A stretch of 64,000 nucleotides of DNA from Macrostomum lignano (taxonomy: Eukaryota): NCBI GenBank assembly GCA_002269645.1, contig NIVC01000851.1:62001-126000 (forward strand). Reading direction: 5' to 3'. The notes under the pieces were generated by a model. That model was not told the DNA's origin. It searched no databases and saw only the letters and a list, made by a program, of their open reading frames with translations. Below, piece after piece: positions 1 to 48,358 of this stretch; the stretch's first letter is position 1; every line of letters begins with the position of its first letter. Position numbers and translations under genes: made by a program.

Positions 1-51
1 GTGGCGCGAGAGTTGAATGGACAGACCGGCATTAAGACTGGCGCTGCCTAC

Positions 52-7164: not shown

Positions 7165-7575
7165 CCACTTCTTCCGCTCTCTTCCCCACCTGTTCTTCCG
7201 CTCTCTTCCCCACCTGTTCTTCCGCTCTCTTCCCCACCTGTTCTTCCGCTCTCTTCCCCACCTGTTCTTCCGCTCTCTTCCCCACCTGTTCTTCCGCTCT
7301 CTTCCCCACCTGTTCTTCCGCTCTCTTCCCCACCTGTTCTTCCGCTCTCTTCCCCACCTGTTCTTCCGCTCTCTTCCCCACCTGTTCTTCCGCTCTCTTC
7401 CCCACCTGTTCTTCCGCTCTCTTCCCCACCTGTTCTTCCGCTCTCTTCCCCACCTGTTCTTCCGCTCTCTTCCCCACCTGTTTTTTCGCTCTCTTCCCCA
7501 CCTGTTCTTCCGCTCTCTTCCCCACCTGTTCTTCCGCTCTCTTCCCCACCTGTTCTTCCGCTCTCTTCCTCCCAT
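7165..7575. repeat. 24-bp minisatellite (TTCTTCCGCTCTCTTCCCCACCTG)n
   Basis: Near-perfect tandem copies. Confidence 0.95.
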
Positions 7576-8324
7576 TTTGTTCCGCTCTCTCTCTCTCTCT
7601 CTCTCTTGTTCCCAATCTCACCATTATCCGCTATATTTTTATTTTTCAATTTGTTTATTACGTAATTCCAAATTATCGTCTTCCATCAAGTTATTCCCTT
7701 GACTTACTCCTTGACTGTCTCTTCTTGGCTTTTATCTTACTTCCACGCTCCCGTCCGCCTCTGCGCACTAACCATAAAGTAAATCTAACATATCTCGCAG
7801 TTTAGCTCTGATTAACCAACTTGACTATTTGCTAATCCGACTTGAACTAGTTCAGACAGTTAGGCAAGGGTTTCTTTCTGGGTCACTATTGTGCGATTAG
7901 CCTGCTTGGGTACACACACGCCTTAAGCTGCGAAATTCACTACCGCTAAAATAACGTCCCATTTCTGTTCTAAGATTCTTTTAACTGCGAAGTTCTTCGT
8001 ATCTGCTTCTTATACTTTCTGTCTCGAATTTCTAGACCGTTGCCACCGAGCCCGACCGCGAGGATCCCGCATGGATCCCACACGGACTCGGGACAGCGCT
8101 ACAGGGGCATAACGGAGTGTGGGAACACGCTCTCTCTTTCTCTCTCTCTCTCGAGCAAACGCAAAAGATTTTGTCCAATGCTAAGTCAAGTTGAACCTCG
8201 ACGCTCTTGCTACATGCGGCACTCTCACGCACACCGACTTGTCACAGCACTTTTTGTTGGCTTACAAGCTTTTTTAGTTATCATTTATACTAGCGTTGAT
8301 GTTAAATGCATCTTTTCATGTACA

Positions 8325-11020: not shown

Positions 11021-11539
11021 CACTCCAAATGTTTTATCTCGAACTCCATGGCAGAGCTTATCGGGGTAACTTGAAATACAAACTTTTTACAGTCCGGGGT
11101 AAATGAGTCATCTATATTGATTCGTAATCTTGTTTAGTTGGGCTTACAGAAGTGGGACACAAATTTTACGATTAATGCTAACTTTTATAGGGCCAGTGGG
11201 TGCAGTGCAAAGTGCTGGTAGACAAGCAGGTGAGGAGCTTGGCTTCATAGCTGATCCTCAACTGCGATCCCTATCTGAGGATTCATGTCTGAGGATTCAT
11301 GTAGATTCCCACTGCGTCGGGATTTTTGATAAGGGGGAAATGGGATTGGGGTTCAGGCACAGGTTGGGCCATCGATACAGACAGGTGAATGAATGCTATT
11401 TCGAACTTGCTTTGGTTATCAATTGTATGAAGCAGACTCGTTGCTGTTCGAAGCTGGGGACAGAATGGGGAAAAAAGAAAGACTACTAAAAATACTGATG
11501 ATATCAAACACAGCGGGGGGCACACTAGGGGATTTGTGA

Positions 11540-12140
11540 AGAGGAGAGGGAGAAGAGGAGAGGAGAGTGAGAAGAGGAGAGGAGAGTGAGAAGAGGAGAG
11601 GAGAGGGAGAAGAGGAGAGGAGAGGGAGAAGAGGAGAGGAGAGGGAGAAGAGGAGAGGAGAGGGAGAAGAGGAGAGGAGAGGAGAGGGAGAAGAGGAGAG
11701 GAGAGGAGAGGGAGAAGAGGAGAGGGAGAAGAGGAGAGGAGAGGAGAGGGAGAAGAGGAGAGGGAGAAGAGGAGAGGAGAGGAGAGGGAGAAGAGGAGAG
11801 GAGAGGGAGAAGAGGAGAGGGAGAAGAGGAGAGGAGAGGGAGAAGAGGAGAGGGAGAAGAGGAGAGGAGAGGAGAGGGAGAAGAGGAGAGGAGAGGGAGA
11901 AGAGAAGAGGAGAGGGAGAAGAGGAGAGGGAGAAGAGGAGAGGAGAGGAGAGGGAGAAGAGGAGAGGGAGAAGAGGAGAGGAGAGGAGAGGAGAGGGAGA
12001 AGAGGAGAGGAGAGGGAGAAGAGGAGAGGGAGAAGAGGAGAGGAGAGGGAGAAGAGGAGAGGGAGAAGAGGAGAGGAGAGGGAGAAGAGGAGAGGGAGAA
12101 GAGGAGAGGGAGAAGAGGAGAGGAGAGGAGAGGGAGAAGA
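11540..12140. repeat. GA-rich polypurine satellite
   Basis: GAGGAGAGGGAGAA-type units. Confidence 0.93.
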
Positions 12141-12489
12141 CCTTGCAAGGAACTTGTGCCCATGCATGTGATTAGCTTGCTGATCCCATACGATCTGATT
12201 GAGGTCTTTGCGAAAGTCAGGAATGCCATAATTTGAAGGCTTGAAAATGCAAAAACAGATGCAGAAGCTCTTTCATTAAGTGGAGCAAGTGCATTGTCAG
12301 GATTAGATACAGCTATTTATTCAAGCTCGTTCTTTCTTTCGTAGAAAACTTGATGTACATGTACGAGCGTATGATGAATTGATCATTCGAGAATCTTGAG
12401 TACTGCAATGTTTCTTTACAGAAACGTTGGTACCTTTTTAACGGAGAATGCTGAGATACCGATAAAATGCTAAATGAGAGTTTATAAGA

Positions 12490-13470
12490 AAGAGAAGAGA
12501 GGAGTGACACGAAGAGGGGAGTGACAAGGAGAGAGGAGTGACACGGGGAGTGGAGTGACAAGGAGAGAGGAGTGACACAAAGAGAGGAGTGACACGGAGA
12601 GGAGTGACACGAAGAGAGGAGTGACACGGAGAGAGGAGTGACATGGAGAGAGAAGTGACACGGAGAGGGGAGTGACAAGGAGAGAAGAGTGACATGGAGA
12701 GAGGAGTGACAAGGAGAGAGGAGTGACACGAAGAGAGGAGTGACACAGAGTGAGGAGTGACAAGGAGAGAGGAGTGACACAGAGAGGAGTGACACAGAGA
12801 GGAATGACACAGAGAGGAGTGACACGAAGAGAGGAGTGACACAGAGAGGAGTGACACGAAGAGAGGAGTGACACAGAGAGGAGTGACACGAAGAGAGGAG
12901 TGACACAGAGAGGAGTGACACAGAGAGGAGTGACACAGAGAGGAGTGACACAGAGAGGAGTGACATGAAGAGAGGAGTGACACAGAGAGGAGTGACACGA
13001 AGAGACGAGATGAGAGATGAGTGACACAGAGAGGAGTGACACGAGTAGAGGAGTGACACGAAGAGAGAAGTGACACGAGGAGAGGAGTGACACGAAGAGA
13101 GGAGTGACACAGAGAGAGGAGTGACACAGAGAGGAGTGACACGAAGAGAGGAGTGACACAGAGAGGAGTGACACAGAGAGGAGTGACACGAAGAGAGAAG
13201 TGACACAGAGAGGAGTGACACGAGGGAGGAGTGACACAGAGAGATGAGTGACACAGAGAGGAGTGACACGAGTAGAGGAGTGACACGAAGAGAGAAGTGA
13301 CACGAGGAGAGGAGTGACACGAAGAGAGAAGTGACACAGAGAGAGGAGTGACACAGAGAGGAGTGACACGAAGAGAGGAGTGACACAGAGAGGAGTGACA
13401 CGAGGGAGGAGTGACACAGAGAGGAGTGACACGAAGAGAGGAGTGACACGAAGAGAGAAGTGACGAAGAG
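12490..13470. repeat. ~15-bp minisatellite (GAGAGGAGTGACACA)n
   Basis: Tandem copies with 15-19 bp variants. Confidence 0.93.
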
Positions 13471-14104
13471 ACAGTAGTCATGAGAAGACTCAAGAGACAG
13501 ACACTTCAGCTGAAAGGGTCAGGCAGTTCAGCTACAGTTCAAATTCGCTTACCTCGAAAACAAAGCCTATGTGGACTCGGGCTGACAGGCAGCGCAGAGA
13601 GCAGCTCCAAGCTGAAATTCCTGACCACAAAGAAAAGATGGCAGGCAACTGCAGCAGAGGTCGGCGTTGATTAATAGCAAATAAAACTGTCAGCTCAGCT
13701 CGGAGTCAGAAAGACAGAGTGAGGGTCAGGGTGCTCTCATTCCTCTCAAACCCAAGATTTCACTGTTAGGGGGGCTTAGTGAGGTGGGCTTGATGGAACA
13801 CTTTGAGCTCTAGTAGATCATGACTGCTTCTAGTAGCTTTTGTGCCAGAGAACTGGCAACACGAGCTCAACAAAAAGCAGAGACCGCTGCGCCAAGCTAA
13901 CTGGCCTGAAGTGGCGCAGTTTGACTCAATAGAAACTGTTTTTAACTTCGAGTATTTGACCTGCTTGCATTGCATAATGGGCCGCACTGCTTGCACCTGC
14001 CCAACTGCTGGAAATGAGAGGAGGATAAACTAGCATGAGCCCCGAAATTTAACTTCATGACAATGCTCTTGTGAACATTTCTATGTCACTATACTGTATA
14101 CCAT

Positions 14105-14830: not shown

Positions 14831-15354
14831 TTCCCTCCGCTCCCTCCTACCCCCCCCCCTGCTCACACTCCTCTCCTCCGCTGCCTGATCCCAGCCACTA
14901 TTCTGCAATCGGCAAGGAGCTGACGCAAGTGCTATAGCATGCCCCTCCCGCATAATTTGATCCATAATTGCAGGACAAAGAGTTTACAGCTCTCCATCTC
15001 AAAGTTGAGCGGGACGCACCTGCCGCAAGGTTTGCTGGTCTCTGCTAGTGCATCATCAAGCAGGCGGATCTGCCTTCAAGTCAAAGAAGCCGACAGCTGA
15101 TTGGCTTATTAATTATTTTTTACAGAATTAATTGTCATACATTGCACTCAAATTGAGCTCCACATTATCCTCCGTATTAGCCTGCGCGGATTAGTCTTTG
15201 TTCCCAGCCTAGCGGGCTTGAAGGAATAGAGCTTGATTCTACACTGCAATGACCTTGCAGTGACCCTGGCCTACCAATCAACCAGACCTGCAAAGCCTAT
15301 AATAACTCTGAGTCTTTGTTCCAGAATCATCCGCGTGCGTTATTATATAATTAG

Positions 15355-16350
15355 AGCATGTCCCATTCTATCTCATTGCATGTCCCATTCTATCTCATTG
15401 CATGTCCCATTCTATCTCATTCCATGTCCCATTCTATCTCATTGCATGTCCCATTCTATCTCATTGCATGTCCCATTCTATCTCATTGCATGTCCCATTC
15501 TATCTCATTCCATGTCCCATTCTATCTCATTGCATGTCCCATTCTATCTCATTCCATGTCCCATTCTATCTCATTCCATGTCCCATTCTATCTCATTCCA
15601 TGTCCCATTCTATCTCATTGCATGTCCCATTCTATCTTATTCCATGTCCCATTCTATCTCATTCCATGTCCCATTCTATCTCATTGCATGTCCCATTCTA
15701 TCTCATTCCATGTCCCATTCTATCTCATTCCATGTCCCATTCTATCTCATTCCATGTCCCATTCTATCTCATTCCATGTCCCATTCTATCTCATTGCATG
15801 TCCCATTCTATCTCATTCCATGTCCCATTCTATCTCATTCCTTGTCCCATTCTATCTCATTGCATGTCCCATTCTATCTCATTGCATGTCCCATTATATC
15901 TCATTCCATGTCCCATTAAATCTCATTCCATGTCCCATTCAATCTCATTCCATTTCCCATTCTATCTCATTCCATGTCCCATTAAATCTCATTCCATGTC
16001 CCATTCAATCTCATTCCATGTCCCATTCTATCTCATTCCAGTTCCCATCATATCTCACTCCATTTCCCATTCTATCTCACTCCATGTCCCATCATATCTC
16101 ATTCCATTTCCCATTCTATCTCACTCCATGTCCCATCATATCTCATTCCAGTTCCCATTCGATCTCACTCCATTTCCCATTCTATCTCATTCCATGTCCC
16201 ATCATATCTCACTCCATTTCCCATTCTATCTCACTCCATGTCCCATCATATCTCATTCCATTTCCCATTCTATCTCACTCCATGTCCCATCATATCTCAT
16301 TCCAGTTCCCATTCGATCTCATTCCAGTTCCCATTCTATCTCATTCCATT
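15355..16350. repeat. 22-bp minisatellite (TCCCATTCTATCTCATTGCATG)n
   Basis: Homogeneous 5' half, diverged 3' half. Confidence 0.95.
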
Positions 16351-17024
16351 CCTACTTGGCATTGATGCGGATCAATGTCTTACCTCACGCTTGGCAACGC
16401 ATACACAATGACAGATGCAATGCTTCAACGCTGTGACCTCATCCATTTGTGCTACGAGTTAAAAGCCCATCAAAGCATCGATAAGACCTCCATGAACTCG
16501 ATTCGGCATGCTTTCGGATAATCATCTGTGGCATTCTCGAGTTGATGCCACATCTAGCCAGACTCTCTTTGTTCTGAGCCACTTGACTGACAGAATTAGA
16601 GTTCCTTTGTTTTCGGGGAGCACTTGGGGGTGGGGGTTAGGAGGACATAAAGAAGTCACAATTGACAGAGAGAAAGTGGCTTCTCACTATCTCACTATTA
16701 CGTAATCCTCAGATTTATTCAAGCCGATGTGGTTGCCATAAAGCCCACGAAATCTCCCATTGATGGCATGCATCCAGACTGGGATTTAAAAAAGCAAGTA
16801 AAGCGAAAAAACATAACTCAATGCACCCTGTGAGTCACGTGGCATTAAAGTCAATCAGAAACCGCTGACACTCATATGACAATCTCTGGGGGAATGAGGT
16901 GTTGTAGAGGGATGAGAATAGCTAAAATAGAACAATGAGCCCCTCGGATTGCTGCAGTGGGACAACCATGGATGAGAAGGGATCATACAGCTCCGATAAC
17001 AAGAGGAAAGAGGAAAAGAGAAAA

Positions 17025-17860
17025 GGTGGGAGAGGACACAAGAGAGAGTGGGAGAGGACACAAAAGAGTGGGAGAGGACACAGGAGAGAGAGAGAGGGAG
17101 AGGACACAGGAGAGAGAGAGAGAGGACACAGGAGAGAGAGGGAGAGGACACTAGAGAGAGTGGGAGAGGACACTGGAGAGAGTGGGAGAGAACACAGGAG
17201 AGAGTGGGAGAGGACACAGGAGAGAGTGGGAGAGGACACAGGAGAGAGTGGGAGAGGACACAGGAGAGAGTGGGAGAGGACACAGGAGAGAGTGGGAGAG
17301 GACACAGGAGAGAGTGGGAGAGGACACAAGAGAGAGTGGGAGAGGACACAAGAGAGAGTGGGAGAGGACACAAGAGAGAGTGGGAGAGGACACAAGAGAG
17401 AGTGGGAGAGGACACAAGAGAGAGTGGGAGAGGACACAAGAGAGAGTGGGAGAGGACACAGGAGAGAGTGGGAGAGGACACAGGAGAGAGTGGGAGAGGA
17501 CACAAGAGAGAGTGGGAGAGGACACAAGAGAGAGTGGGAGAGGACACAGGAGAGAGTGGGAGAGGACACAGGAGAGAGTGGGAGAGGACACAGGAGAGAG
17601 TGGGAGAGGACACATGAGAAAGAGGGAGAGGACACAGGAGAAAGAGGGAGAGGACACAGGAGAAAGAGGGAGAGGACACAGGAGAAAGAGGGAGAGGACA
17701 CAGGAGAGAGTGGGAGAGGACACAGGAGAGAGTGGGAGAGGACACTGGAGAGAGAGGGAGAGGACACAGGAGAAAGAGGGAGAGGACACAGGAGAAAGAG
17801 GGAGAGGACACAGGAGAAAGAGGGAGAGGACACAGGAGAGAGTGGAAGAGGACACAGGAG
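17025..17860. repeat. 22-bp minisatellite (GGGAGAGGACACAGGAGAGAGT)n
   Basis: Tandem copies. Confidence 0.95.
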
Positions 17861-18719
17861 AGATCAGACAGAGTGGATGGGGATATATAAGTCACAGACA
17901 CACAGCAAGCGGTTCACAGCAGCCAGAAAGGAATATTTACAAGCAGACACAAGCAAGTTTCTTAAGACTGTTGTAACGCATGCAGGTATCAAGCCATATT
18001 GATTGCTTGACTTCGTGAGCGGACCAACCCCAGAGGAGATTAACAATAGCAACTTATTAGACAGCTTATCTGCCGGCAGTTATTGCACAACCGCAACTAA
18101 GGCAGATGAGTAAGAGCATTAAGCCACAGATATTTGCAATCACACGCAATCAGAGACGTTCGCCATTGAGCAACCGACTAACCCAAAATTACAGTTCGCA
18201 GCCTTAGTAACTAAAATTCTAGCTCGGAACTGTCTTTATAAGCTTTGAACAAATAAGCCTACTCAAGCCAGCTCACGATTGAGTCTGACAGTTGAGCAAT
18301 CAGCTTGTCAGCTGGGGCAGCCCCAACCTCTGGCTCAGTCTAACTTCCTGATTGCAGCACAGAATTTATCAGCTGAGAGTATTTAGCCAGGCGATTTGCT
18401 ACTTACTGGTAGATAAAGAGTTGACTGAAATTGTGGTTGTAAAACTGCCATTTGAATTCGTATTCAGTTTCTTTCTGATCGCTTAGAAAATACGCGAATA
18501 ATTTCATTACTCCGCTGTCAGTAGAGCGCAGCGAATGAGAATGCTAAATTTAGGTCTGTCTCAAGGTTATAATTAGCAGTGATAGGAGCTGTAATGGAGA
18601 ATGAACATGTGTTAGATGTTCCAGAAAGATTCATAAAAATCGCTGGCAGAGTATCGCCCTCCCAAGAGATCGCCATTCGACCTCCCATAGAGGGTCGCTC
18701 CAAGAAATCCAATGTACGA

Positions 18720-26660: not shown

Positions 26661-27564
26661 ATAACAGCGTCGATCTTGTCACTAATTTTATTTCAGCGAG
26701 AAATAGTGACAGAGCTGTCCGTCTGTCACTGTGAGCTCACTTGAGCTGTATAGATTGGCAGAGTCACGCACAAAGACAGTGCAAGCTCAGGCAATGGCAA
26801 CAGAAGTTGCTTGTTAGTCAAATAAGATACAATTGAGTTGAGAAGATCCTCGCCGGAATCCTGACTAGCCATAAAATATCCCTACTAATTAACTCATCAG
26901 AAAATTTGCACACTTTGCAGATGTCAGAGAAGAAACACTGTTTGATTGAAAGTTATATTCAACAATCAAGTAAGGCAAGCAGTTAGAAGACAATTTAGCT
27001 CAGTTTACTTGATCAGAATTGCGGCCGAACGCAATTTGAAAGATTTATTTTCATTGAGATGGACAGGAAGTTCCGCTTTCATCAAGCGTTCAGTTTCAAA
27101 AACTAAGGAGCAACGGAGAAGCAAGGAGGGGAACAGTAGTTAGATGAGAGGAATTTCCCCACTTACAAGCGCATTTTCTATTCTAAAAATAGAAAACTTC
27201 TGGCCAATCAGAGTAAAGCAGGGCATTCCCTGCCTTTTGTATTTTTAAAAATAGCACGTCCCAGCCAATCAGAGTGAATCGGGGTTTCTCCATTTTAGCC
27301 GGTAGCTAAAAATATCCCTCCTTGCTTCCTGCGATCTGCTGCACTGCAACGCGATTAAAAGTGCGTCAAATTCTCTTCAAAACTTTTAACTAGCGAACCG
27401 CTTGAAACAAGTTAGTTAAATTAGACCAAAATCGAGCTCTTTTAATTAGAATTAATTTAAGGGTCAGGGGTCAGATTAGAAATCTGACGGAACGCATTAG
27501 GTTTTTCGAATTTCAGGTGTTATTGTCCCCAGATATCGGCCGAAATGGCAGCTGTTCGGTCAGC

Positions 27565-27753
27565 TTATCGCCCGTAGCAGCTGATTGGGTGCAGGATGCA
27601 CCGGTAGTCCATGCGTCGTTTCCGCCGCCGGTCCATCTGCGACTGCAGTCGGTGCTGCCACCAATCCCGGTCTGGCGACGGCATCTGCTGCAGCTGCTGT
27701 CGCTGTTCCAACTCGGCTGCTGCATCCTTGGCTGCGTCTGCCGAGACTGCCTG
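27565..27753 (-). CDS. Terminal exon of an allatostatin-C/somatostatin-like neuropeptide precursor
   Basis: Acceptor actccAG (27755-27754). Reads QAVSADAAKDAAAELEQRQQLQQMPSPDRDWWQHRLQSQMDRRRKRR-MDYRCILHPISCY-GR-stop (TAA 27567-27565). It has a polybasic cleavage site, C-x6-C with PISC[FY], and a Gly amide donor. AATAAA on the minus strand at 27049-27044. Confidence 0.85.
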   Translation of the reverse strand, partial: QAVSADAAKDAAAELEQRQQLQQMPSPDRDWWQHRLQSQMDRRRKRRMDYRCILHPISCYGR

Positions 27754-27874
27754 CTGGAGTTCATCGTTTCATAATCAGTGACTGAACAGCGAATTTCGAA
27801 CAACTTTAAAACTGCTTGCTTCGGGACCGCCGCTTTTTTTCTTTTGTCTCTCTAAAACTTGCTGTGTTTCCCGC

Positions 27875-28840
27875 TTTGGCTCCCCCTCTCTCCATGGCTC
27901 CCCCTTTCTCCCTGGCTCCCCCTCTCTCTCTGGCTCCCCTCTCTCTCTGGCTCCCCTCTCTCCCTGGCTCCCCCTCTCTCCCTGGCTCCCCCTCTCTCCC
28001 TGGCTCCCCCTCTCTCCCTGGCTCCCCCTCTCTCCCTGGCTCCCCCTCTCTCCCTGGCTCCCCTCTCTCCCTGGCTCCCCTCTCTCCCTGGCTCCCCCTC
28101 TCTCCCTGGCTCCCCCTCTCTCCCTGGCTCCCCCTCTCTCCCTGGCTCCCCCTCTCTCCCTGGCTCCCCCTCTCTCCCTGGCTCCCCCTCTCTCCCTGGC
28201 TCCCCCTCTCTCCCTGGCTCCCCCTCTCTCCCTGGCTCCCCCTCTCTCCCTGGCTCCCCCTCTCTCCCTGGCTCCCCCTCTCTCCCTGGCTCCCCCTCTC
28301 TCCCTGGCTCCCCCTCTCTCCCTGGCTCCCCCTCTCTCCCTGGCTCCCCTCTCTCCCTGGCTCCCCCTCTCTCCCTGGCTCCCCCTCTCTCCCTGGCTCC
28401 CCCTCTCTCCCTGGCTCCCCCTCTCTCCCTGGCTCCCCCTCTCTCCCTGGCTCCCCCTCTCTCCCTGGCTCCCCCTCTCTCCCTGGCTCCCCCTCTCTCC
28501 CTGGCTCCCCCTCTCTCCCTGGCTCCCCCTCTCTCCCTGGCTCCCCCTCTCTCCCTGGCCCCCCTCTCCCTGGCTCCCCCTCTCTCCCTGGCTCCCCCTC
28601 TCTCCCTGGCTCCCCCTCTCTCCCTGGCCCCCCTCTCTCCCTGGCTCCCCCTCTCTCCCTGGCTCCCCCTCTCTCCCTGGCTCCCCCTCTCTCCCTGGCT
28701 CCCCCTCTCTCCCTGGCTCCCCCTCTCTCCCTGGCTCCCCCTCTCTCCCTGGCTCCCCCTCTCTCCCTGGCTCCCCCTCTCTCCCTGGCTCCCCCTCTCT
28801 CCCTGGCTCCCCCTCTCTCCCTGGCTCCCCCTCTCTCCCC
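27875..28840. repeat. 18-bp minisatellite (CTGGCTCCCCCTCTCTCC)n inside the AstC-like intron
   Basis: Tandem copies with 17/18-bp variants. Confidence 0.95.
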
Positions 28841-29259
28841 ATTTCCCCTCTCTCTACTCTCTCTCCCTCTCCCTTTCTCCATCTCCTTCACACGACTAAA
28901 CTATGACTCCGCAAGAATGCCTTCACGTTTTCTTAGTTCTCTATAGTCCATTTTTAGATTGATATTGAATAAGTATCTTAGCTAGAATTATATGTAGCTT
29001 CTCCAATAATTAAACATTTTTTACAGCTAAACAGTGTTTTAACAGTGCAACATAAGCTTTTCGATTTGATTAAGTATTTTATGCTGTTATAAAAATAAAA
29101 GCGTTGTCCTTAAATTAGTTTACAGCTAGAATAGGAGTAATTGAATATTGATAACTATTGATATATTGTTAATATACTTGCAAAAAATATACACCAAATA
29201 TCGCTTAAAAATACTGTAAGTGAGTGCATGCAGAGCTGTAGAGTAGGACGGATAAATAC

Positions 29260-29630
29260 GTAGGTAGGTAAGTAGGTAGGTAAGTAGGTAGATAGGTAGC
29301 CAGGTAGGTAGGCAGGTAGATAGGTAGCTAGGTAGGTAGGTAGGTAGGTAGATAGGTAGGTAGGTAGGTAGGCAAGTAGGTAGGTAAGTAGGTAGATAGG
29401 TAGCCAGGTAGGTAGGCAGGTAGATAGGTAGCCAGGTAGGTAGGTAGGTAGATAAGTAGGTAGATAGGTAGCCAGGTAGGTAGGTAGGTAGATAGGTAGC
29501 CAGGTAGGTAGGCAGGTAGGTAGGCAGGTAGGTAAGTAGGTAGATAGGTTGCCAGGTAGGTAGGTAGGTAGGTAGGTAGGTAGGTAGGTAGCCAGGTAAG
29601 TAGGCAGGTAGGCAGGTAGGCAGGTAGGTA
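29260..29630. repeat. Degenerate (GTAG)n microsatellite
   Basis: Direct reading. Confidence 0.93.
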
Positions 29631-29697
29631 AGGTTAGACATTGGTAGCATAAGCCTTCATCCACCCTATTGAATTCTGATCACCGCAGCTCATTTAC

Positions 29698-29784
29698 TTG
29701 AATGGCAGAACTAATTAACAGGTAGCACAGAGAGGAGAGAAGCGAGGAGAGCGGAAACAAAGTGAAGACAAGTCGCTCAGTCTT
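29698..29784 (-). CDS. Signal-peptide exon of the AstC-like precursor
   Basis: Strong acceptor ctctcctgcttctAG (29786-29785). 87 nt = KTERLVFTLFPLSSLLSSLCYLLISSAIQ (basic N-region plus hydrophobic core). Phase-0 donor CAA|GTAAAT (29697) matches the phase-0 acceptor at 27753. There is no ATG inside the exon. Confidence 0.6.
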
Positions 29785-29947
29785 CTAGAAGCAGGAGAGC
29801 CAGCCGGACAGAGTCTGAAACTTATCTGGCAGCATTGCTTTCAATCAGCCAAATTTAGACTTGCAGAAAGAAACAGCGGGCTCAAGAAGACAGAGCTAGT
29901 CTGGAGACGGCCCCTCAGCCAGCCTCAGTCAGCCAATAAATAACTTT

Positions 29948-29954
29948 CTTTATA
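29948..29954 (-). promoter_or_regulatory. Candidate TATA box of the AstC-like gene
   Basis: TATAAAG on the minus strand at 29954-29948, ~165 nt upstream of the 29784 acceptor. Confidence 0.4.
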
Positions 29955-30164
29955 CTTCCATTCGGATTTCTGCTTTCGATGAGAAAAGCGCAGTTGATGA
30001 GATTTGGAGATGAGCTCTGGAGCTGACTCAGTCACCCCTTCCTGACTCGACTGTTCGGAAATAATGGGGAAAAGTCAAGATAGACCAAAATTAGAAAAGT
30101 GGTGGATAGGGGGATATTCTCCCATTTGGTGCAAAGTTTATTGTTTGGGAGTTCAAGTCTAAGA

Positions 30165-30645
30165 GATCATTCGGTAATCTTTGATGAGACTGTTCGGTAA
30201 TCTATGATGAGACTGTTCGGTAATCTATGATGAGACTGTTCGGTAATCTTTGATGAGACTGTTCGGTAATCTTTGATGAGGCTGTTCGGTAATCTTTGAT
30301 GAGACTGTTCGGTAATCTTTGATGAGACTGTTCGGTAATCTTTGATGAGACTGTTCGGTAATCTATGATGAGACTGTTCGGTAATCTTTGATGAGACTGT
30401 TCGGTAATCTCTGATGAGACTGTTCGGTAATCTTTGATGAGACTGTTCGGTAATCTTTGATGAGACTGTTCGGTAATCTTTGATGAGACTGTTCGGTAAT
30501 CTATGATGACTGTTCGGTAATCTTTGATGAGACTGTTCGGTAATCTTTGGTGAGACTGTTCGGTAATCTTTGATGAGACTGTTCGGTAATCTATGATGAC
30601 TGTTCGGTAATCTTTGATGAGACTGTTCGGTAATCTATGGTGAGA
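30165..30645. repeat. 23-bp minisatellite (GACTGTTCGGTAATCTTTGATGA)n
   Basis: About 20 copies, abutting the SINE 5' end. Confidence 0.95.
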
Positions 30646-31020
30646 CCGTAGCCCAGTGGTCTGGCGCGGCCCTCCGATGTGCCAGTGGCCCAGGCTCGAT
30701 TCTAAGTGCAGTCACATTAATTTGGGGCTGAATTGGAATGTCGGCTTGGCTCTGCTCGTGCAATTAACGCTCCTGATGGCCAACCCCCCAAGGCGCAGTG
30801 AAGTGTACATGCCTAACGATAATATAAAGTTAGGGCCGCTGTACACTCCTGTGTGAGTGCCTGTGCGTATGACTGCGTACGTATCCGCGCGCTTGTGTGC
30901 CTGCTCAGGGGAGTCGGCGGAATGGGCAGCAATGCCTCTCACCGGTTGTGTGACAATGTCGCTTAGAGTGCGCCAGGGTGCAAACGCAGACATCGAAAAC
31001 AGAGTCTTGCACAAAAATAG
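30645..31020 (+). mobile_element. tRNA-derived SINE, second family, near full length
   Basis: A-box TAGCCCAGTGG, degenerate B-box GGCTCGATTCT (30693). Body motifs TTAATTTGGG, GTGTACATGCCT (30803) and GGCCGCTGTACAC (30834) are shared with the element at 51050. A-rich end. Confidence 0.55.
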
Positions 31021-31834
31021 TCAAAGTCCAATTCGCTCTCTCACCCAGAAGGACTGCCGAACTCTCCCAGCGGTGCTGGCGGTCCCCGGCTGCTGACTCA
31101 GGGCCAGCACGAGTAAAATCAGAAATAGCGCCGTGACCTTCATTGTCTGGAAGACGATTGTAAGATTAAGTTAAAAATAAAAATATCCTAGTGAAGGAAT
31201 CCTACTTTACAATCTGTCTCATCAAACAGCAAGCACCGCATGCTATGGATATTTTCAGTCTTGTGCCTGTACACCAAAAAATACCGAGCAAAAGTTACAT
31301 GGACTTTTCTAGCTAAGCACCTGGATTGGAGACAAAAAATGACTCGATTTTTTTAGCAACATGAGGCCATGGTTTTCAAGCCCAATTGAGTAAGGCGATT
31401 GATCCAGTTTAGTTGATTTCATTTGAGTTCGAACTGCGGGAAATCTATGGCCTCATGTTTTCAAAACTCTGGGCAGAGCCTTCCGGTCCAGATGCCAGCT
31501 TGAGAAGTCCATGTCTCGGGAATTTAATTCCTGGCCATAGACAGCTCCTCTGCTCGCTGACCGCTGGCACAAATTTAATTCAAGAAGCAGTTTAAGCCCC
31601 AGATTCTATACACCCCAATACACAGCACTGCTGTCTATGGCCAAAAGTCTCTAAATATAGACTACAGACGTATCGAATCCATATTGTCTATGGCTACGTT
31701 ATAGCGAGTATCACGAGACGGAGTCCTAACCAAAATTTGTGCCTTGACAACGAATTGAGCACTTGGGTAAGATAATTAAACTGAATGGCTATTTTCGAGT
31801 CATACTTCTAAAGCATAGATATGCTATCAGAAAC

Positions 31835-35620: not shown

Positions 35621-36775
35621 TATTTGCATTACATTGGGTATACAATTAATGGATTTTGTTGGCTCCGGAAAAGCGTAAGCATTGATAGGTTATAAAATTT
35701 TGATTCGGATTTAAATAGAAACTCTCTTTCTATTTGAAGCAGTTCCAAACGAGACTACTATCAGTAGCTCCATAAGTTTGACCATGGCAATGGCATACTA
35801 GTTTATGCTTGGCTGCTGCTGTAAGCAGTAAATTATGGCGATAATCCATACTTTACGGCTTCCTCCACCCCTCCTCTCCCGCTCTGTCTTTGAGAAGATT
35901 GTCACGGTGATTGATGGCAGCAGCGCGGGGGACCACCCGGCGGCTCCATTGAAAAAGTTGGCCATGACAGGAAAATTTATTGTCACTTGGGGCAGGGGCT
36001 GAACGGGCCTCCCCCAGTCTGCGATGCAATAAATATAAATATGTGAATATGCAAATCTTTTGTGCTGTGCAGCCCCATTTTGTTTTGAAATTGTCCAAGC
36101 TTACGGGCTCTCGCTCTCCCCTCCCTCCCCTCCTCGCTCCCACTCTCTCGCTGCCCCATTGATTCATCGATCTGCCAGAAATCAGCTGGTAGTTCATGTG
36201 AGCTGCCAAACCTTTCTCTCTCTCTCTTTCTGGTTGCGCGGTGTGTCTTTCACAGTGCCGCCACCGCCTCCAGCGGCTTTTGAGTCGAGGATTTGAGAAG
36301 GCTGAACTGCGAGTCCCCCTGTCCCTCGGAGTCGGCCGGTCTCCCCATTATCCTGGCCTATCAATCACTCCCCGATTTGCTGGGCCGGTGGGGCCTGGCC
36401 GCGGCTCCTTTGACTGAACGACCTTCCAACCCCCCCCCCTTCACAGGCCTTCGCCGGCCTCCTCACTTGGCCGCGGTCATTCTGCGGAGGCTGAACTGCC
36501 GACAATTTGACGGCTGTCATTGCTAGTGGCTCACCGCGTGGTGGAGAGCAAGAGGGAAGTGGAGAACTCGCGGATGAAGTCCGGTGATTGATAGCTCGGC
36601 GGTCTGAGAGCGCGGCGAATCGCGCACACTGCATGCTTTGCGGCTGCGGCTAATGCAGAACTTCTGTACGGCAGGCCTGGTGCGGAAAACAATATTTACC
36701 ACTCTGTGATCCGCACTGGTATTTAACAGCATATAGCACTTTTATAGTGCTGTGCTTATGTTGGAAATTTGTTTA

Positions 36776-38378
<1,603 letters not shown>

Positions 38379-38929
38379 CAGTCCCAATGGCTCTCCAGCT
38401 GTTAAGAGCCTATAGGTGAGGCTAGTCTGCATGCAGTTCCAAATGCACCTGTCTGCGCACGCCTGTTTCGTGAGTTATTTTTTATAAAATGAATGGCCCG
38501 GCACGCCACACATTTTGATTTACTTCTTCGCTCACAAGAGGCGGCAATCTGTTGCACAGCCCGGGTAATGTATGCCCAGGGCGCGTGACACTTGCCGACA
38601 GGGAGGTGTTGGAGCCGCTTGGTCGGAAACCTTGCCTTTATTTGACTTTTTCTTTGCTAGTAAATCATGCTGCAATGAGATTTTGCCGAAGAAAACAAAA
38701 CAAGCGACAAAGAAACTTCATGCGATATTTGTCTGCAGTATACACTGGTTGTAATCCCACAAAGTCGAGCAAACAGTGTCTGCTATTGAAGACGTTCTTG
38801 AGCACAGTGGATAAGTGATGCTGCGTGGATAGATGGTCACTGGGACCATTGGATAGACAGTTTCTTCTTCCTTTTCAAATCACTGAGAGCTGTGAAGAAT
38901 CTTACGAGATCAAATATTGCACTGTTTGA

Positions 38930-42409: not shown

Positions 42410-44030
42410 GAGACAGAGGCAGAGAGATCGCAGAGCAGCAGAGAGACAGTGGCAGAGAGATCGCAGAGCAGCAGAGAGACAGAGGCAGAGAGACAGTGGC
42501 AGAGAGATCGCAGAGCAGCAGAGAGACAGAGGCAGAGAGATCGCAGAGCAGCAGAGAGACAGAGGCAGAGAGACAGAGGCAGAGAGACAGAGGCAGAGAG
42601 ACAGAGGCAGAGAGACAGAGGCAGAGAGACAGAGGCAGAGAGACAGAGGCAGAGAGACAGAGGCAGAGAGACAGAGGCAGAGAGACAGAGGCAGAGAGAC
42701 AGAGGCAGAGAGACAGAGGCAGAGAGACAGAGGCAGAGAGACAGAGGCAGAGAGACAGAGGCAGAGAGACAGAGGCAGAGAGACAGAGGCAGAGAGACAG
42801 AGGCAGAGAGACAGAGGCAGAGAGACAGAGGCAGAGAGACAGAGGCAGAGAGACAGAGGCAGAGAGACAGAGGCAGAGAGACAGAGGCAGAGAGACAGAG
42901 GCAGAGAGACAGAGGCAGAGAGACAGAGGCAGAGAGACAGAGGCAGAGAGACAGAGGCAGAGAGACAGAGGCAGAGAGACAGAGGCAGAGAGACAGAGGC
43001 AGAGAGACAGAGGCAGAGAGATCGCAGAGCAGCAGAGAGACAGAGGCAGAGAGATCGCAGAGCAGCAGAGAGACAGAGGCAGAGAGATCGCAGAGCAGCA
43101 GAGAGACAGAGGCAGAGAGATCGCAGAGCAGCAGAGAGACAGAGGCAGAGAGATCGCAGAGCAGCAGAGAGACAGAGGCAGAGAGACAGAGGCAGAGAGA
43201 CAGAGGCAGAGAGACAGAGGCAGAGAGACAGAGGCAGAGAGACAGAGGCAGAGAGATCGCAGAGCAGCAGAGAGACAGAGGCAGAGAGTCAGTGGCAGAG
43301 AGATCGCAGAGCAGCAGAGAGACAGAGGCAGAGAGATCGCAGAGCAGCAGAGAGACAGAGGCAGAGAGACAGAGGCAGAGAGATCGCAGAGCAGCAGAGA
43401 GACAGAGGCAGAGAGATCGCAGAGCAGCAGAGAGACAGAGGCAGAGAGACAGAGGCAGAGAGATCGCAGAGCAGCAGAGAGACAGAGGCAGAGAGACAGA
43501 GGCAGAGAGATCGCAGAGCAGCAGAGAGACAGAGGCAGAGAGACAGAGGCAGAGAGATCGCAGAGCAGCAGAGAGACAGAGGCAGAGAGACAGAGGCAGA
43601 GAGATCGCAGAGCAGCAGAGAGACAGAGGCAGAGAGACAGAGGCAGAGAGATCGCAGAGCAGCAGAGAGACAGAGGCAGAGAGACAGAGGCAGAGAGATC
43701 GCAGAGCAGCAGAGAGACAGAGGCAGAGAGACAGAGGCAGAGAGATCGCAGAGCAGCAGAGAGACAGAGGCAGAGAGACAGAGGCAGAGAGATCGCAGAG
43801 CAGCAGAGAGACAGAGGCAGAGAGACAGAGGCAGAGAGATCGCAGAGCAGCAGAGAGACAGAGGCAGAGAGACAGAGGCAGAGAGACAGAGGCAGAGAGA
43901 TCGCAGAGCAGCAGAGAGACAGAGGCAGAGAGATCGCAGAGCAGCAGAGAGACAGAGGCAGAGAGACAGAGGCAGAGAGATCGCAGAGCAGCAGAGAGAC
44001 AGAGGCAGAGAGACAGAGGCAGAGAGACAG
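42410..44030. repeat. Composite satellite of 14-bp (GAGACAGAGGCAGA) and 19-bp (GAGATCGCAGAGCAGCAGA) units
   Basis: A pure 14-mer run is followed by alternating 14/19-mer patterns. Confidence 0.95.
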
Positions 44031-45169
44031 TTGTTGGCGCTAGGCATATGAAATGAAAAAGACAGCAGAAGCAGAACGCACCAACCGACCACTGTTGTGA
44101 CGGTGGCAGCTGCTGCAGCCACCGCGTAAATGATAAATTGTATAGCCTATTGAGTACAGCCTACCTTTAAAGCCCCCAGTGTCTTAAAGTTTACAACTTT
44201 CCGTGGGTTTTTAGCCCCCCCCCTTCCTCCCAAGTCTCAGTCTCAGACCGACCGACACCTTTTTAACTGGAGGCCTGGCCCTGAGGCTTTAGGTAATAGA
44301 CAGACAGACAGACAGACCGCGCGGTGGAGTGGACGGCGGAGTCAAGAGAGCGAGTGGCTGCGACTGCAACTGGCAAAGTGACACACCAGTCACATGCACC
44401 CAATAGCGGTTATTGTGGGTTACACACAGGAATGAAATGAGCGGGGCAGAGAGAGGGTGCAATAAAATTGTCTGAGAATGCCGCCCGCCGCCGTCCGCGG
44501 GGCTCATGCATCAAAGTGGCGTTTTACGACCGGCCTGCCCTTGCCCCCCCCCCCCTCCTCCCCATAGCTTTTGGTGGCGGGCCGCCTTTGATGCAATGAT
44601 GCGACTCGTCTGCGCTGACAGATTGATGTCTTTCGAGGAGGCCGGCACGCGAGCCAGCCCTAGAGAGGGGGGGGGGAGGGGCGGCAGCGACTGCGCAGCG
44701 GTTTTGATTTACGGCTGAGGCCCCCGCAACCTTCCAATCCAATTCCAGAGTTTTGGCCGGGGGGCTGCTGCGGCTGCTAGGGCAGGAAGATAGAGAAAGA
44801 AACAGGAAAACATTGAAAGAAAATTTAAAGGTGAGATAGAGGGATAGACCCGGTATTGTCTGGGCCATCAGTCTCCTAAGTCTGACTTTAGGGAAACCAA
44901 ACGCAGACTGTGGGGTCGGCAACTGCCATAATTTTATCTTTGTTTCCGCATTTGCTTTAAAGAAGAAAGGTGAGCCAGCCAGGTTTCTTCTAGGTGCAAC
45001 GCAAGTAGTGAGGTGAGGCCCGTGCTGTTCCACTTTAAAATGGAATTTACCGGATGACCGAAACTTCAAACTGGCAATCTTCGTATTAAAATTGGCTCCG
45101 TTTGAAAAAAATGACAATCAGAAAGAAGCTACCCAAATACCGGTAAAAATCGCACCCCAGACCTCAGAT

Positions 45170-46840: not shown

Positions 46841-48358
46841 AAGCCAGTTAAAGTGCCTGCGTGCAGTGGAATTTTATGCGGCAAGATACAAAACCCTTTA
46901 CACTTTCACAACGCTTGCCGCAATTCTCTCTCTGAGTTTTATTTATTGCCAACATGCATATATTCCATGCAGTTTCCAACTTGCTGATTTCTCCTCCTTT
47001 CCTAGAGTCTACATTCGAGCCTTTTGAAGTTCAAGCTGCCTCCGCCCATACGTGAAATATAGATATTTATTCACCCCGCGGGGAAAAAGGCTTTCAGCGC
47101 CAAGGCGCAATAATTGTATAGAATTTCGGCTGTCTCCAAGTGAGGTCGTGTCCCCCCCCTATTTGGCGCTTTGATGCAACTCAAATAGCTCAGAGCTTTG
47201 GCACCAAATTGCTCTGTTTTCAACCTATTGCATATACAGCGGCTTCTGGGCCTTGGCAGTGGGTGGTCGTTATTGCCTTTTTGTAGCACTTCTGCTCTCC
47301 GGCTGGCAAGAGGGCGGAGGGATCAGGTTTGGGGCACTAAATTATGTTTCAGAAATGTTTCAGAAGTTTTCCAGCCGTTAACCCCCCCCCTCTCTCTCTC
47401 TGCCTCACCTCAAATCATGCGATATATGCTCGATGGGTTTAGGAGAGCGGAGAGGCTGGTTCGCAGCAGCAGCAGCACCGCAAAAGTTCCGACAGTTTTA
47501 CAGCGTCCCTGTCAGGCCCCGATTCTTTACTCCCCCTGGTTCTCTCCCGGTTGCCGCTTTGCAGGTAAAAAAGTGGTTAATCGAAAAAATAACAAAATAA
47601 ACAACACAAAAAAGAGGCCAGACAGACTTCCTCGCAGATCTATCGCATTACTGCATGCAGTCCAGCTGCACTACCGGGCGTGTTTAAGGCGCATATTATT
47701 AATATGAAGTTGAATAGAGAGGCTGCATATATTCGAGTTCGTGAATGATATATGATGCAGGTCGCTAGTCTGTCACTGAGTCCTCGCGCTAGAATATTGG
47801 AGCTGAGTTTGTCTAGTTCAAGATGACTCCCCCCAGCAGCCTCGGAGCCTCATCTATTCAGTTTATGGTAGTTCTTGAAATTTATTGCCATTCAGGCCTG
47901 CATTTGATTATGGAAGTTTTTTCTGTCTCTCCGCCTGAGTCACTGACTAGCCCCGGTCCGCTCCAGCAAAACAGATACATTACAGCTCTGCTGCCTGCTT
48001 CCCTCCTCGGCCTCTTAAATCTTATTTCCCCGCGTAGACTAAAAATTTAGTTCATTAATTTAGATATATAGATTCGTGCTTTCTTGTTGAAGAGGAGCGA
48101 AGACCGCCGACTATCCCGCATGCACGGGCGGGCGCTGGCTGCTTGGAGGATTGCAAATACGTTTTTACTCGAATCAAATTGTAGCTAATACCGGAGAGGG
48201 AAACTGTTTTAAACTTTTTTTATTTGACAGAATTGGTTCCGCGACAGTTTATGTATGCTTGAAGCATCTTAAACTTAACAAAGAATCATCTTTATTCACT
48301 TGTGCCCGCCCGCACCTGCATTTCTGCTCTACAGCAGGCATCCGCCCGACTCATCAGG

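What the first reader, a model, noticed from the sequence alone, without database searches (positions are those of the whole stretch)
27565..29784. Hidden allatostatin-C/somatostatin-type neuropeptide gene (MDYRCILHPISCY-amide)
Seen in the sequence: two minus-strand exons, neither in the ORF track, splice in phase 0 to [M]KTERLVFTLFPLSSLLSSLCYLLISSAIQ|QAVSA-DAAKDAAAELEQRQQLQQMPSPDRDWWQHRLQSQMD-RRRKRR-MDYRCILHPISCY-GR*. That is a signal peptide, a pro-region, a polybasic convertase site, a single C-terminal peptide with C-x6-C, and a Gly amide donor. Established: arthropod AstC ends CYFNPISCF with the same Cys spacing, amidated paralogues (AstCCC) and amidated spiralian AstCs exist, and the family is orthologous to somatostatin. 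Inference: this is an AstC precursor combining the PISC motif with amidation. To my knowledge AstC ligands are poorly documented in flatworms, and ORF-based annotation would miss this gene.
Basis: partly seen in the sequence, partly recalled or inferred. Interest (0 to 1): 0.85.

Follow-up and report, generated by a model that had tools for sequence, protein, structure and literature searches.

The report
Flatworm allatostatin-C gene, already annotated

Summary
The window is Macrostomum lignano DNA (scaffold NIVC01000851.1).

**What holds.** Window 27750-27565 (minus strand) encodes a pro-region, RRRKRR, MDYRCILHPISCY, then Gly-Arg-stop.

**What does not hold.**
It lies inside the intron of the RNA-based GenBank gene model.
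- The annotated first exon is at 31143-31045 (MKVTALFLILLVLAL...SFW). It has a consensus GTGAGA donor and is followed by a single phase-0 intron of 3,294 nt packed with minisatellites.
- The gene is not hidden. The 94-aa protein is PAA75984.1/PAA80541.1 ("hypothetical protein"). A two-residue variant in UniProt, A0A1I8HTR2, is named "Allatostatin".

**Family.** A profile of 15 published spiralian AstC precursors scores the protein at 30.8 bits (E 4e-8 against all 2,224 targets: the window's six-frame ORFs plus the two gene models). The next chance ORF scores 6 bits. The six-residue Cys loop, C-terminal position, amidation signal and phase-0 intron all fit AstC. Somatostatin/urotensin-like motifs are absent.

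**Literature.** I found no paper describing a flatworm AstC ligand and no other flatworm homologue. Receptor, expression and processing were not tested.

**Verdict.** A real but ordinary gene: the peptide call was right, the gene model was wrong, and interest is low to moderate.

The parts
31147..31152 (-). TTCCAG acceptor-like motif 3 nt upstream of the ATG. It could be the SL trans-splice site or the acceptor of a 5'UTR intron (inferred only).
   Evidence: Sequence. It matches the [T/C]TNCAG motif reported as enriched at M. lignano SL trans-splice acceptors (PMC8629364). No read evidence is available here.
31045..31143 (-). Coding exon 1, aa 1-33: MKVTALFLILLVLALSQQPGTASTAGRVRQSFW. It holds the start codon, the signal peptide (about aa 1-22/25) and the start of the pro-region.
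   Evidence: tblastn shows 100% identity to residues 1-33 of PAA75984.1/PAA80541.1. It has the highest hydropathy (3.13) of all candidate upstream exons.
27751..31044 (-). The single intron: phase 0, 3,294 nt, GT...AG, lying in the pro-region. It contains three tandem-repeat arrays at 30170-30646, 29260-29630 and 27877-28839.
   Evidence: Exon mapping, boundary sequences, and tandem repeats. A single phase-0 intron in the pro-region is the reported structure of spiralian ASTC genes (PMC9048919).
29698..29784 (-). It is rejected as an intronic, pyrimidine-rich open frame of 87 nt with no ATG and an in-frame TAG immediately upstream.
   Evidence: It is absent from the annotated protein. No database protein contains it (3 candidates, and only P0001 passes).
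27565..27750 (-). Coding exon 2, aa 34-94 plus the TAA stop. It holds the pro-region, cleavage site, mature peptide and amidation signal.
   Evidence: Translation. tblastn shows 100% identity to residues 34-94 of P0001.
27613..27630 (-). The polybasic prohormone-convertase site RRRKRR (aa 74-79).
   Evidence: Sequence. It aligns with the RKR/KKR sites of AstC precursors.
27574..27612 (-). The predicted mature peptide MDYRCILHPISCY (aa 80-92). A Cys84-Cys91 disulfide ring encloses six residues. The calculated monoisotopic mass, amidated and oxidised, is 1609.72 Da.
   Evidence: Sequence.
27568..27573 (-). Gly93-Arg94: a C-terminal basic residue to be trimmed, then the Gly amide donor.
   Evidence: Sequence. 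The same C-terminal architecture (CYGRK / CYGK / CFGK) occurs in nemertean, brachiopod and arthropod AstC-family precursors. Amidation was confirmed by mass spectrometry for nemertean AstC2.
27441..27446 (-). ATTAAA, a candidate polyadenylation signal about 120 nt after the stop codon (inferred).
   Evidence: Sequence only. It is not supported by read data here.

Best explanation
This is the Macrostomum lignano allatostatin-C-type neuropeptide precursor gene (GenBank gene Mlig009589, 94 aa), on the minus strand.

**Gene structure**
- Two coding exons: 31143-31045 and 27750-27565.
- One phase-0 intron of 3.3 kb separates them.

**Inferred processing**
1. Exon 1 supplies a classical signal peptide that directs the prepropeptide into the secretory pathway.
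2. A prohormone convertase cuts after RRRKRR (aa 74-79).
3. A carboxypeptidase removes Arg94.
4. Peptidylglycine alpha-amidating monooxygenase (PAM) converts Gly93 into a C-terminal amide.
5. Cys84 and Cys91 form a disulfide bond.

The product is the 13-residue cyclic peptide MDYRC(ILHPIS)CY-NH2. By analogy with other AstC peptides it would act as a neuropeptide or hormone on an AstC-type rhodopsin-gamma GPCR.

**Shown versus inferred**
- Shown: the sequence, the exon structure as annotated from RNA data, and the family-level similarity.
- Inferred: processing, amidation, disulfide formation, neuronal expression and the receptor.
For: **Identity and gene model**
- Exon 2 is 100% identical to PAA75984.1/PAA80541.1 of M. 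lignano. A two-residue variant, A0A1I8HTR2, is named 'Allatostatin'.
- Both exons map at 100% in the window. The window equals NIVC01000851.1.
- The GenBank annotation was built from RNA-seq and a transcriptome assembly (PMC5730564).
- The splice sites fit the reported M. lignano consensus GT[G/A]AG ... CAG: donor TGG|GTGAGA and acceptor cagcag|GCA.

**Family**
- An HMM of 15 spiralian AstC/AstC2 precursors from the PMC8557429 supplement gives a co-linear, full-length alignment of 30.8 bits (E 4.3e-8, Z=2224). The best chance ORF in the window scores 6.0 bits.
- An HMM of 55 non-redundant arthropod AstC/AstCCC precursors gives 19.2 bits (E 1.9e-4). The next ORF scores 4.9 bits.
- hhalign aligns the last 19 residues end to end with probability 70% and E 4e-5.
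- The loop is 6/9 identical to nemertean AstC2 (CFFHAISCY) and to the aplacophoran mollusc Scutopus (CMVHVISCY) and a further mollusc sequence (CMVHLISCY). It is 5/9 identical to arthropod CYFNPISCF.
- The six-residue loop and the phase-0 pro-region intron match published AstC properties (PMC9048919).

**Other**
- The strict C-terminal pattern occurs in 0 of 400 shuffled windows.
- The only two differences between database variants (L53P, M56T) fall in the pro-region, not in the signal peptide, cleavage site or peptide.
Against: - No transcript reads, peptidomics or expression data could be examined directly. The exon structure rests on the public RNA-based annotation.
- No orthologue in any other flatworm was detected. 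Cross-species conservation of the reading frame is therefore untested.
- The duplicate locus is almost 100% identical and gives no information.
- The loop lacks the Asn found in most AstC peptides and the Phe of the FxP motif.
- The signal peptide was judged by hydropathy and HMM alignment only, not with SignalP.
- Whether M. lignano has an AstC-type receptor was not tested.
Confidence: 0.88

Rival explanations
1. The reader's gene model is correct, at least as an isoform. The 87-nt segment 29784-29698 would be used as an alternative first exon, with its AUG donated by the spliced leader, which ends in ATG. Alternatively it would be a frame-preserving cassette exon between exon 1 and exon 2.
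For: - The M. lignano spliced leader ends in ...TTGCATG (PMC8629364).
- The segment is open and 87 nt long (a multiple of 3). It is flanked by AG and GT and is moderately hydrophobic.
Against: - The RNA-based GenBank model does not contain it.
- No protein among 5.8 billion clusters contains it.
- The acceptor is TAG, not the enriched [T/C]TNCAG. The donor GTAAAT lacks the G of GT[G/A]AG.
- Open, hydrophobic, GT-terminated frames are common in this pyrimidine-rich, repeat-rich intron.
Confidence: 0.05
2. The peptide is a somatostatin/urotensin-II-like (SSRP-like) peptide rather than an AstC-type peptide.
For: It shares the general architecture: a signal peptide, a pro-region with a phase-0 intron, and a C-terminal disulfide-looped peptide. 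Gene structure alone does not discriminate between the families (PMC9048919).
Against: - There is no WK/FWK motif.
- The loop has six residues, as in all protostome AstCs. Published examples of SSRP-like peptides have a much shorter loop, such as CIWKVC in an annelid peptide (loop properties).
- No Pfam match to any somatostatin family appears, even at E<=10.
- The protein matches AstC profiles significantly.
Confidence: 0.03
3. The peptide-like ORF is a chance product of a repeat-rich, GC-rich genome and is not a functional gene.
For: - The window is full of long spurious ORFs produced by minisatellites.
- An overlapping 96-aa ORF exists in another frame of exon 2.
- No orthologues were found.
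Against: - The strict pattern occurs in 0 of 400 shuffles.
- The profile E-value is 4e-8, with a gap of about 25 bits to the next ORF.
- A canonical signal-peptide exon sits upstream with a consensus donor in the correct phase.
- The gene is present in an RNA-evidence-based annotation at two loci.
Confidence: 0.02

Closest known systems
Nemertean 'Allatostatin C2' precursors (e.g. Lineus longissimus, peptide DYVRDCFFHAVSCY-NH2, confirmed by mass spectrometry; Thiel et al. 2021, PMC8557429)
   Same: - Precursor of about 90-100 aa with an N-terminal signal peptide.
- A single peptide at the extreme C-terminus, after a K/R-rich site.
- A DY...R...C start, His at loop position 3, Ser-Cys-Tyr at the end, and a Gly-Arg(-Lys) amidation signal.
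- 5-6 of 9 loop-to-Tyr positions are identical.
   Different: - M. lignano has one residue, not three, between DY and the first Cys.
- Its first two loop residues are aliphatic (Ile-Leu), not Phe-Phe.
- It has Pro-Ile where the nemerteans have Ala-Val/Ile.
- The pro-regions are not alignable with confidence.
Molluscan AstC precursors (e.g. the aplacophoran Scutopus ...CMVHVISCYKKKK and a further mollusc sequence ...CMVHLISCYKK; Lottia ...CLVNLISCFRKR)
   Same: - An aliphatic first loop residue.
- His (in Scutopus and a further mollusc sequence) and Ile-Ser-Cys-Tyr.
- A six-residue loop and a C-terminal position.
- 6/9 identity for the two CMVH[LV]ISCY sequences.
   Different: The molluscan examples seen end in basic residues without Gly, so they are predicted not to be amidated. 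They also lack the loop Pro.
Arthropod allatostatin C (QVR[FY]RQCYFNPISCF) and AstCCC / 'prohormone-1' (SYWKQCAFNAVSCF-NH2)
   Same: - The six-residue loop, and Pro-Ile-Ser-Cys-aromatic identical to classical AstC.
- A Gly-basic amidation end as in AstCCC.
- A similar precursor length of 85-97 aa.
- Significant profile match.
   Different: - The first loop residue is aliphatic, not aromatic, and there is no Asn.
- Classical arthropod AstC is not amidated.
- Ecdysozoan genes carry an additional phase-2 intron (PMC9048919). The M. lignano gene has only the phase-0 intron.
Chordate somatostatin/cortistatin and protostome SSRP-like (urotensin-II-like) peptides
   Same: A C-terminal disulfide-looped peptide on a small precursor with a phase-0 intron in the pro-region.
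   Different: - There is no FWK/WK motif and the loop size differs.
- There is no detectable sequence similarity.
- Current literature treats SS-type and AstC-type peptides as paralogous or distinct families (PMC8851493, PMC9048919).

Membership tests
Allatostatin-C (AstC) type neuropeptide precursors | An N-terminal signal peptide on a small precursor of about 85-140 aa | tested here: met
   - The 94-aa protein starts MK + VTALFLILLVLAL + SQQPGTAS.
- Mean hydropathy of the best 12-mer is 3.13.
- It aligns with the signal peptides of AstC precursors in both HMMs.
- This is a heuristic test only; SignalP was not available.
Allatostatin-C (AstC) type neuropeptide precursors | A single bioactive peptide at the extreme C-terminus, preceded by a di- or polybasic cleavage site | tested here: met
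   RRRKRR (aa 74-79) is followed by 13 residues, then Gly-Arg-stop. There are no other peptide copies.
Allatostatin-C (AstC) type neuropeptide precursors | [quoted passage not shown] | tested here: met
   C84-ILHPIS-C91. The two Cys are the only invariant columns in the alignment with 13 spiralian AstCs.
Allatostatin-C (AstC) type neuropeptide precursors | Loop composition: Asn common at loop position 3, an FxP motif in many members, and an aromatic residue after the second Cys | tested here: inconclusive
   - Tyr after the second Cys, and Pro-Ile-Ser, are present.
- Asn is replaced by His, as in nemertean AstC2, the aplacophoran Scutopus and a further mollusc sequence.
- The Phe of FxP is absent.
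- The literature states there is no strictly conserved motif.
Allatostatin-C (AstC) type neuropeptide precursors | Gene structure: a phase-0 intron in the pro-region, which is the only intron in spiralian ASTC genes | tested here: met
   There is one intron between codons 33 and 34 (phase 0), at 31044-27751. The criterion is from PMC9048919. The authors note that this feature is shared with SS-type genes, so it does not discriminate.
Allatostatin-C (AstC) type neuropeptide precursors | Significant sequence similarity to, or clustering with, accepted AstC precursors | tested here: met
   - Spiralian AstC HMM: 30.8 bits, E 4.3e-8.
- Arthropod AstC-family HMM: 19.2 bits, E 1.9e-4.
- hhalign: probability 70%, E 4e-5.
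- E-values are for a search space of 2,224 targets (the window's six-frame ORFs plus the two gene models), not a proteome or database.
- A formal CLANS analysis was not done.
Allatostatin-C (AstC) type neuropeptide precursors | The mature peptide activates an AstC-type (rhodopsin-gamma, SSTR/opioid-related) GPCR | not testable with these tools
   No M. lignano proteome or genome search for the receptor was possible, and no assay was available.
Allatostatin-C (AstC) type neuropeptide precursors | Expression in neurons or endocrine cells, and detection of the processed peptide | not testable with these tools
   No RNA-seq, in situ or peptidomic data were accessible. The protein collection holds only genome-derived records for this protein.
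Somatostatin / urotensin-II / protostome SSRP-like peptides | An FWK or WK motif within the disulfide loop, and a loop of a different size (published examples are not six residues) | tested here: not met
   The loop is ILHPIS: six residues with no Trp-Lys. The motif description is from PMC8851493 and PMC9048919.
Somatostatin / urotensin-II / protostome SSRP-like peptides | A match to a somatostatin-family profile | tested here: not met
   No somatostatin-related Pfam family appears among the hits at E<=10.

The most novel reading that the evidence does not exclude
This may be the first documented AstC-type ligand in Platyhelminthes.
- It combines the ancestral, arthropod-like loop Pro-Ile-Ser with the C-terminal amidation seen in nemerteans and brachiopods.
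- It may be retained in the early-branching Macrostomorpha while absent or unrecognisably diverged in planarians and parasitic flatworms.
- If so, it would anchor AstC signalling in the flatworm ancestor and give a ligand for deorphanising flatworm 'allatostatin-like' GPCRs.

My evidence does not exclude that subscription-only literature (e.g. Koziol et al. 2016) already lists it.
Probability: 0.45. Interest if true: 0.4.

Novelty: already known. Interest (0 to 1): 0.25.

Why it matters
- **State of knowledge.** Flatworm neuropeptide catalogues, as far as I could search them, do not list an AstC ligand. A 2018 GPCR survey explicitly said allatostatin ligands were unreported in flatworms, although allatostatin-like receptors are present.
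- **What a confirmed peptide would add.** It would fill in one of the conserved bilaterian peptide systems for the phylum. It would give a defined ligand (MDYRCILHPISCY-NH2, disulfide-bridged, 1609.72 Da) for receptor deorphanisation. It would also add a spiralian data point with the 'arthropod' Pro-Ile-Ser loop to the somatostatin/AstC evolution debate.
- **Limit.** The gain is incremental, because the gene and its family label already sit in public databases.
- **For the scan itself.** The peptide-end heuristic worked. In this repeat-rich genome, however, an upstream 'signal-peptide exon' cannot be chosen by eye.

Tried and rejected
- **PDB.** A sequence search gave only noise.
- **Single-sequence HMMER.** Exon 2 against 1.84 billion representative proteins returned only the protein itself plus one spurious 1,603-aa hit at E 9e-4.
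- **Word-indexed searches.**
  - A spiralian AstC + M. lignano profile returned only Lingula and M. lignano, both of them query members.
  - So no other flatworm AstC was found. Sensitivity for peptides this short is poor, so this is weak negative evidence.
- **Duplicate locus.** Comparison with NIVC01000575.1 to look for exon-versus-intron conservation gave no information. The loci are almost 100% identical outside repeat copy number.
- **Transcript evidence.** The look-up of encoding contigs returned only the two genome scaffolds and no assembled RNA contigs.
- **Literature.**
  - Ten full-text searches found no paper describing a flatworm AstC ligand, and none containing the peptide string.
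  - Koziol et al. 2016 is not held in the library.
  - The planarian prohormone supplement of Collins et al. 2010 contains no PISC / SC[FY]G strings.
  - The Thiel 2021 sequence collections contain flatworm entries for other families but no PISCY/HPISC string, as far as the truncated files show.
- **C-terminal-only arthropod profile.** A 30-residue profile dominated by CAFNAVSC did not separate the gene from chance ORFs ('tail'). Only full-length profiles did.
Full report
**Source of the window.** It returned one hit, 100% identical over the exon-2 part: 'hypothetical protein BOX15_Mlig009589g1 [Macrostomum lignano]'. The cluster look-up gives accessions PAA75984.1 and PAA80541.1 (genes g1 and g2). 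It also gives a 94-aa variant, UniRef100_A0A1I8HTR2, whose source name is 'Allatostatin'. The protein is encoded on two scaffolds of assembly GCA_002269645.1. The window is 100% identical to NIVC01000851.1. The second locus, NIVC01000575.1, differs essentially only in repeat copy number.

**The observation.**
- 27753-27565 translates to QAVSADAAKDAAAELEQRQQLQQMPSPDRDWWQHRLQSQMDRRRKRRMDYRCILHPISCYGR*.
- 29784-29698 translates to KTERLVFTLFPLSSLLSSLCYLLISSAIQ, followed by GTAAAT.
The preceding codon is TAG and the segment contains no ATG.

**The annotated gene model.** The database protein reads MKVTALFLILLVLALSQQPGTASTAGRVRQSFW|AVSADAAKD...CYGR.
- tblastn places residues 1-33 at window 31143-31045 and residues 34-94 at 27750-27568, both at 100% identity.
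- Exon 1 has the ATG in the context ACAATGA. It ends TGG|GTGAGA. Exon 2 begins after cagcag|.
- The intron (31044-27751, 3,294 nt) is in phase 0. It contains three tandem arrays, including 54 copies of an 18-mer.
- The GenBank annotation of this assembly was derived from RNA-seq and a transcriptome assembly, not from ORF finding (PMC5730564). The model therefore carries indirect transcript support.

- I enumerated all 298 GT dinucleotides on the minus strand in the 8.2 kb upstream of exon 2.
  - 175 have at least 20 open codons upstream in phase 0.
  - 12 of these also carry a hydrophobic 12-mer.
  - 3 of those also have a usable donor.
- Of these three, the annotated exon stands out: hydropathy 3.13, an ATG, and donor GTGAGA.
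- The segment is pyrimidine-rich low-complexity DNA, which translates to Leu/Ser/Phe/Pro.
- One route could rescue it. The M. lignano spliced leader ends in ATG (PMC8629364), so trans-splicing at ttctag|AAG would give M-KTER.... The segment is also 87 nt long and frame-preserving, so it could formally be a cassette exon.
- Nothing supports either use.
  - The annotated protein lacks the segment.
  - No protein in the collection contains it.
  - The acceptor is TAG rather than the enriched [T/C]TNCAG.
  - By contrast, the sequence just before the annotated ATG is TTCCAG|ACAATG, which fits that trans-splice motif. This is inference only.

**Is the peptide end more than chance?** The strict pattern is a dibasic site, 2-10 residues, C-x6-C-[FY]-G-[KR]+, then a stop. 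It occurs once in the six-frame translation and in none of 400 shuffles that preserve composition in 1-kb blocks. A looser pattern without the Gly-basic end occurs 0.22 times per shuffle.

**Family assignment.** Pfam has no matching family. I therefore built profiles from accepted family members.

*Arthropod profile.*
- A search with typed arthropod AstC/AstCCC peptides returned 174 proteins, of which the best 120 were retrieved. Many are named allatostatin C, allatostatin-CCC or prohormone-1.
- 108 of the 120 end CAFNAVSCFG[K/R], which predicts amidation. The other 12 end CYFNPISCF[R/K], which does not.
- An HMM of 55 non-redundant full-length precursors scored the annotated protein at 19.2 bits (E 1.9e-4). 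The target set held 2,224 sequences: 2,222 six-frame ORFs of the window plus the two gene models.
The best unrelated ORF scored 4.9.
- hhalign aligned the last 19 residues end to end (probability 70%, E 4e-5).

*Spiralian profile.*
- I built it from 15 sequences in the supplement of Thiel et al. 2021: nemertean AstC and AstC2, brachiopod AstC and molluscan AstC.
- It gave a co-linear alignment from signal peptide to C-terminus at 30.8 bits (E 4.3e-8). The next ORF scored 6.0 bits.

*Peptide-level comparison.*
- CILHPISCY is 6/9 identical to nemertean AstC2 (CFFHAISCY), whose DYVRDCFFHAVSCY-amide form was confirmed by mass spectrometry.
- It is also 6/9 identical to the aplacophoran mollusc Scutopus (CMVHVISCY) and a further mollusc sequence (CMVHLISCY), and 5/9 identical to arthropod CYFNPISCF.

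*Fit to published AstC properties.*
- The loop of exactly six residues and the aliphatic first loop residue agree with published descriptions of spiralian AstC (PMC9048919). The Gly-basic amidation end is seen in the nemertean and brachiopod sequences.
- The single phase-0 intron in the pro-region agrees as well (PMC9048919).
- Retention of the loop Pro is arthropod- and echinoderm-like. Other lophotrochozoan AstCs have V/L/I at that position (PMC8851493).
- SS/urotensin-type features are absent: there is no WK/FWK motif and the loop size differs.

**Mechanism.**
- Shown: the precursor architecture.
- Inferred from established prohormone processing:
  1. Signal-peptide cleavage near residues 22-25.
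  2. Convertase cleavage after RRRKRR.
  3. Carboxypeptidase removal of Arg94.
  4. Amidation by PAM using Gly93.
  5. A Cys84-Cys91 disulfide.
- The product is MDYRCILHPISCY-NH2 (1609.72 Da).
- Action on an AstC-type GPCR is by analogy only. The receptor was not examined.

**How new is it?**
- The gene is neither hidden nor missed. It is in GenBank at two loci, and a near-identical UniProt entry already carries the name 'Allatostatin'.
- In the searchable literature I found no description of a flatworm AstC ligand. McVeigh et al. 2018 stated that allatostatin ligands had not been reported in flatworms (PMC6114109).
- The 2021-2022 AstC/somatostatin evolution papers do not mention flatworms in their main text.
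- The planarian prohormone supplement has no such peptide.
- Koziol et al. 2016, the most likely place for a prior description, is not held.
- Database searches found no other flatworm homologue, but such short peptides are near the detection limit.
- I therefore rate the feature 'already known' at the database level. There is a moderate chance that its recognition as the first flatworm AstC ligand would be new to the literature.

- Arthropod CYFNPISCF, amidated AstCCC-type paralogues and amidated spiralian AstCs are all verified here.
- 'Orthologous to somatostatin' is contested. Zhang et al. 2022 and Koch et al. 2022 argue that SS-type and AstC-type peptides are paralogous or distinct.

**Limits.**
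- I examined no transcript reads, SignalP output, receptor search, orthologues or expression data.
- The profile E-values refer to a window-sized search space.

Noticed in passing
window 57733-59406 (+): A 557-aa open frame with a full-length match to the amiloride-sensitive sodium channel family (DEG/ENaC, Pfam PF00858, E 4.6e-46). It is probably a large exon or an intron-poor gene for a peptide- or acid-gated channel relative.
   Followed up: partly
window 48302-50884 (+): An 860-aa Gln/Ala/Pro-rich open frame with several weak C2H2 zinc-finger matches. It is a likely transcription-factor gene, and its GC content (about 60%) is much higher than that of the surroundings.
   Followed up: partly
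window 48-1127 (-): An open frame with a RhoGEF (Dbl-homology) domain (PF00621, E 5.8e-12). It runs towards the window edge and is probably an exon of a larger gene.
   Followed up: partly
whole window, e.g. 1180-2086, 6938-7805, 11283-13493, 15233-16436, 16855-18002, 36756-38432, 42449-44122; within the AstC intron 30170-30646, 29260-29630, 27877-28839: There are very many minisatellite and microsatellite arrays that create long ORFs in several frames on both strands. Any ORF-based reading of this genome is dominated by such artefacts. This fits the published estimate that simple and tandem repeats make up about 15% of the M. lignano genome.
   Followed up: partly
L001 (NIVC01000575.1) versus L002 / window 27343-31443: A second copy of the whole AstC locus exists on another scaffold. 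It is almost 100% identical in exons, intron and flanks and differs only in tandem-repeat copy number. This fits the recent duplication or extra chromosomes of the sequenced DV1 line.
   Followed up: yes
window 27513-27803 (-): A 96-aa ORF in another frame (with an internal ATG giving MNSSRQSRQTQ...) overlaps the AstC exon 2. It has no signal peptide and no database support, so it is probably a by-product of the GC-rich coding sequence.
   Followed up: partly
window 31144-31152 (-): If the spliced leader (which ends in ATG) is joined at TTCCAG|ACAATG, the leader's AUG would be in frame with the gene's own ATG, giving M-T-M-K.... This would add two residues to the signal peptide. No read evidence was available.
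   Followed up: no
protein P0002 (UniProt A0A1I8HTR2) versus P0001: The two public variants of the precursor differ at L53P and M56T, both in the pro-region. The signal peptide, cleavage site and mature peptide are identical.
   Followed up: yes
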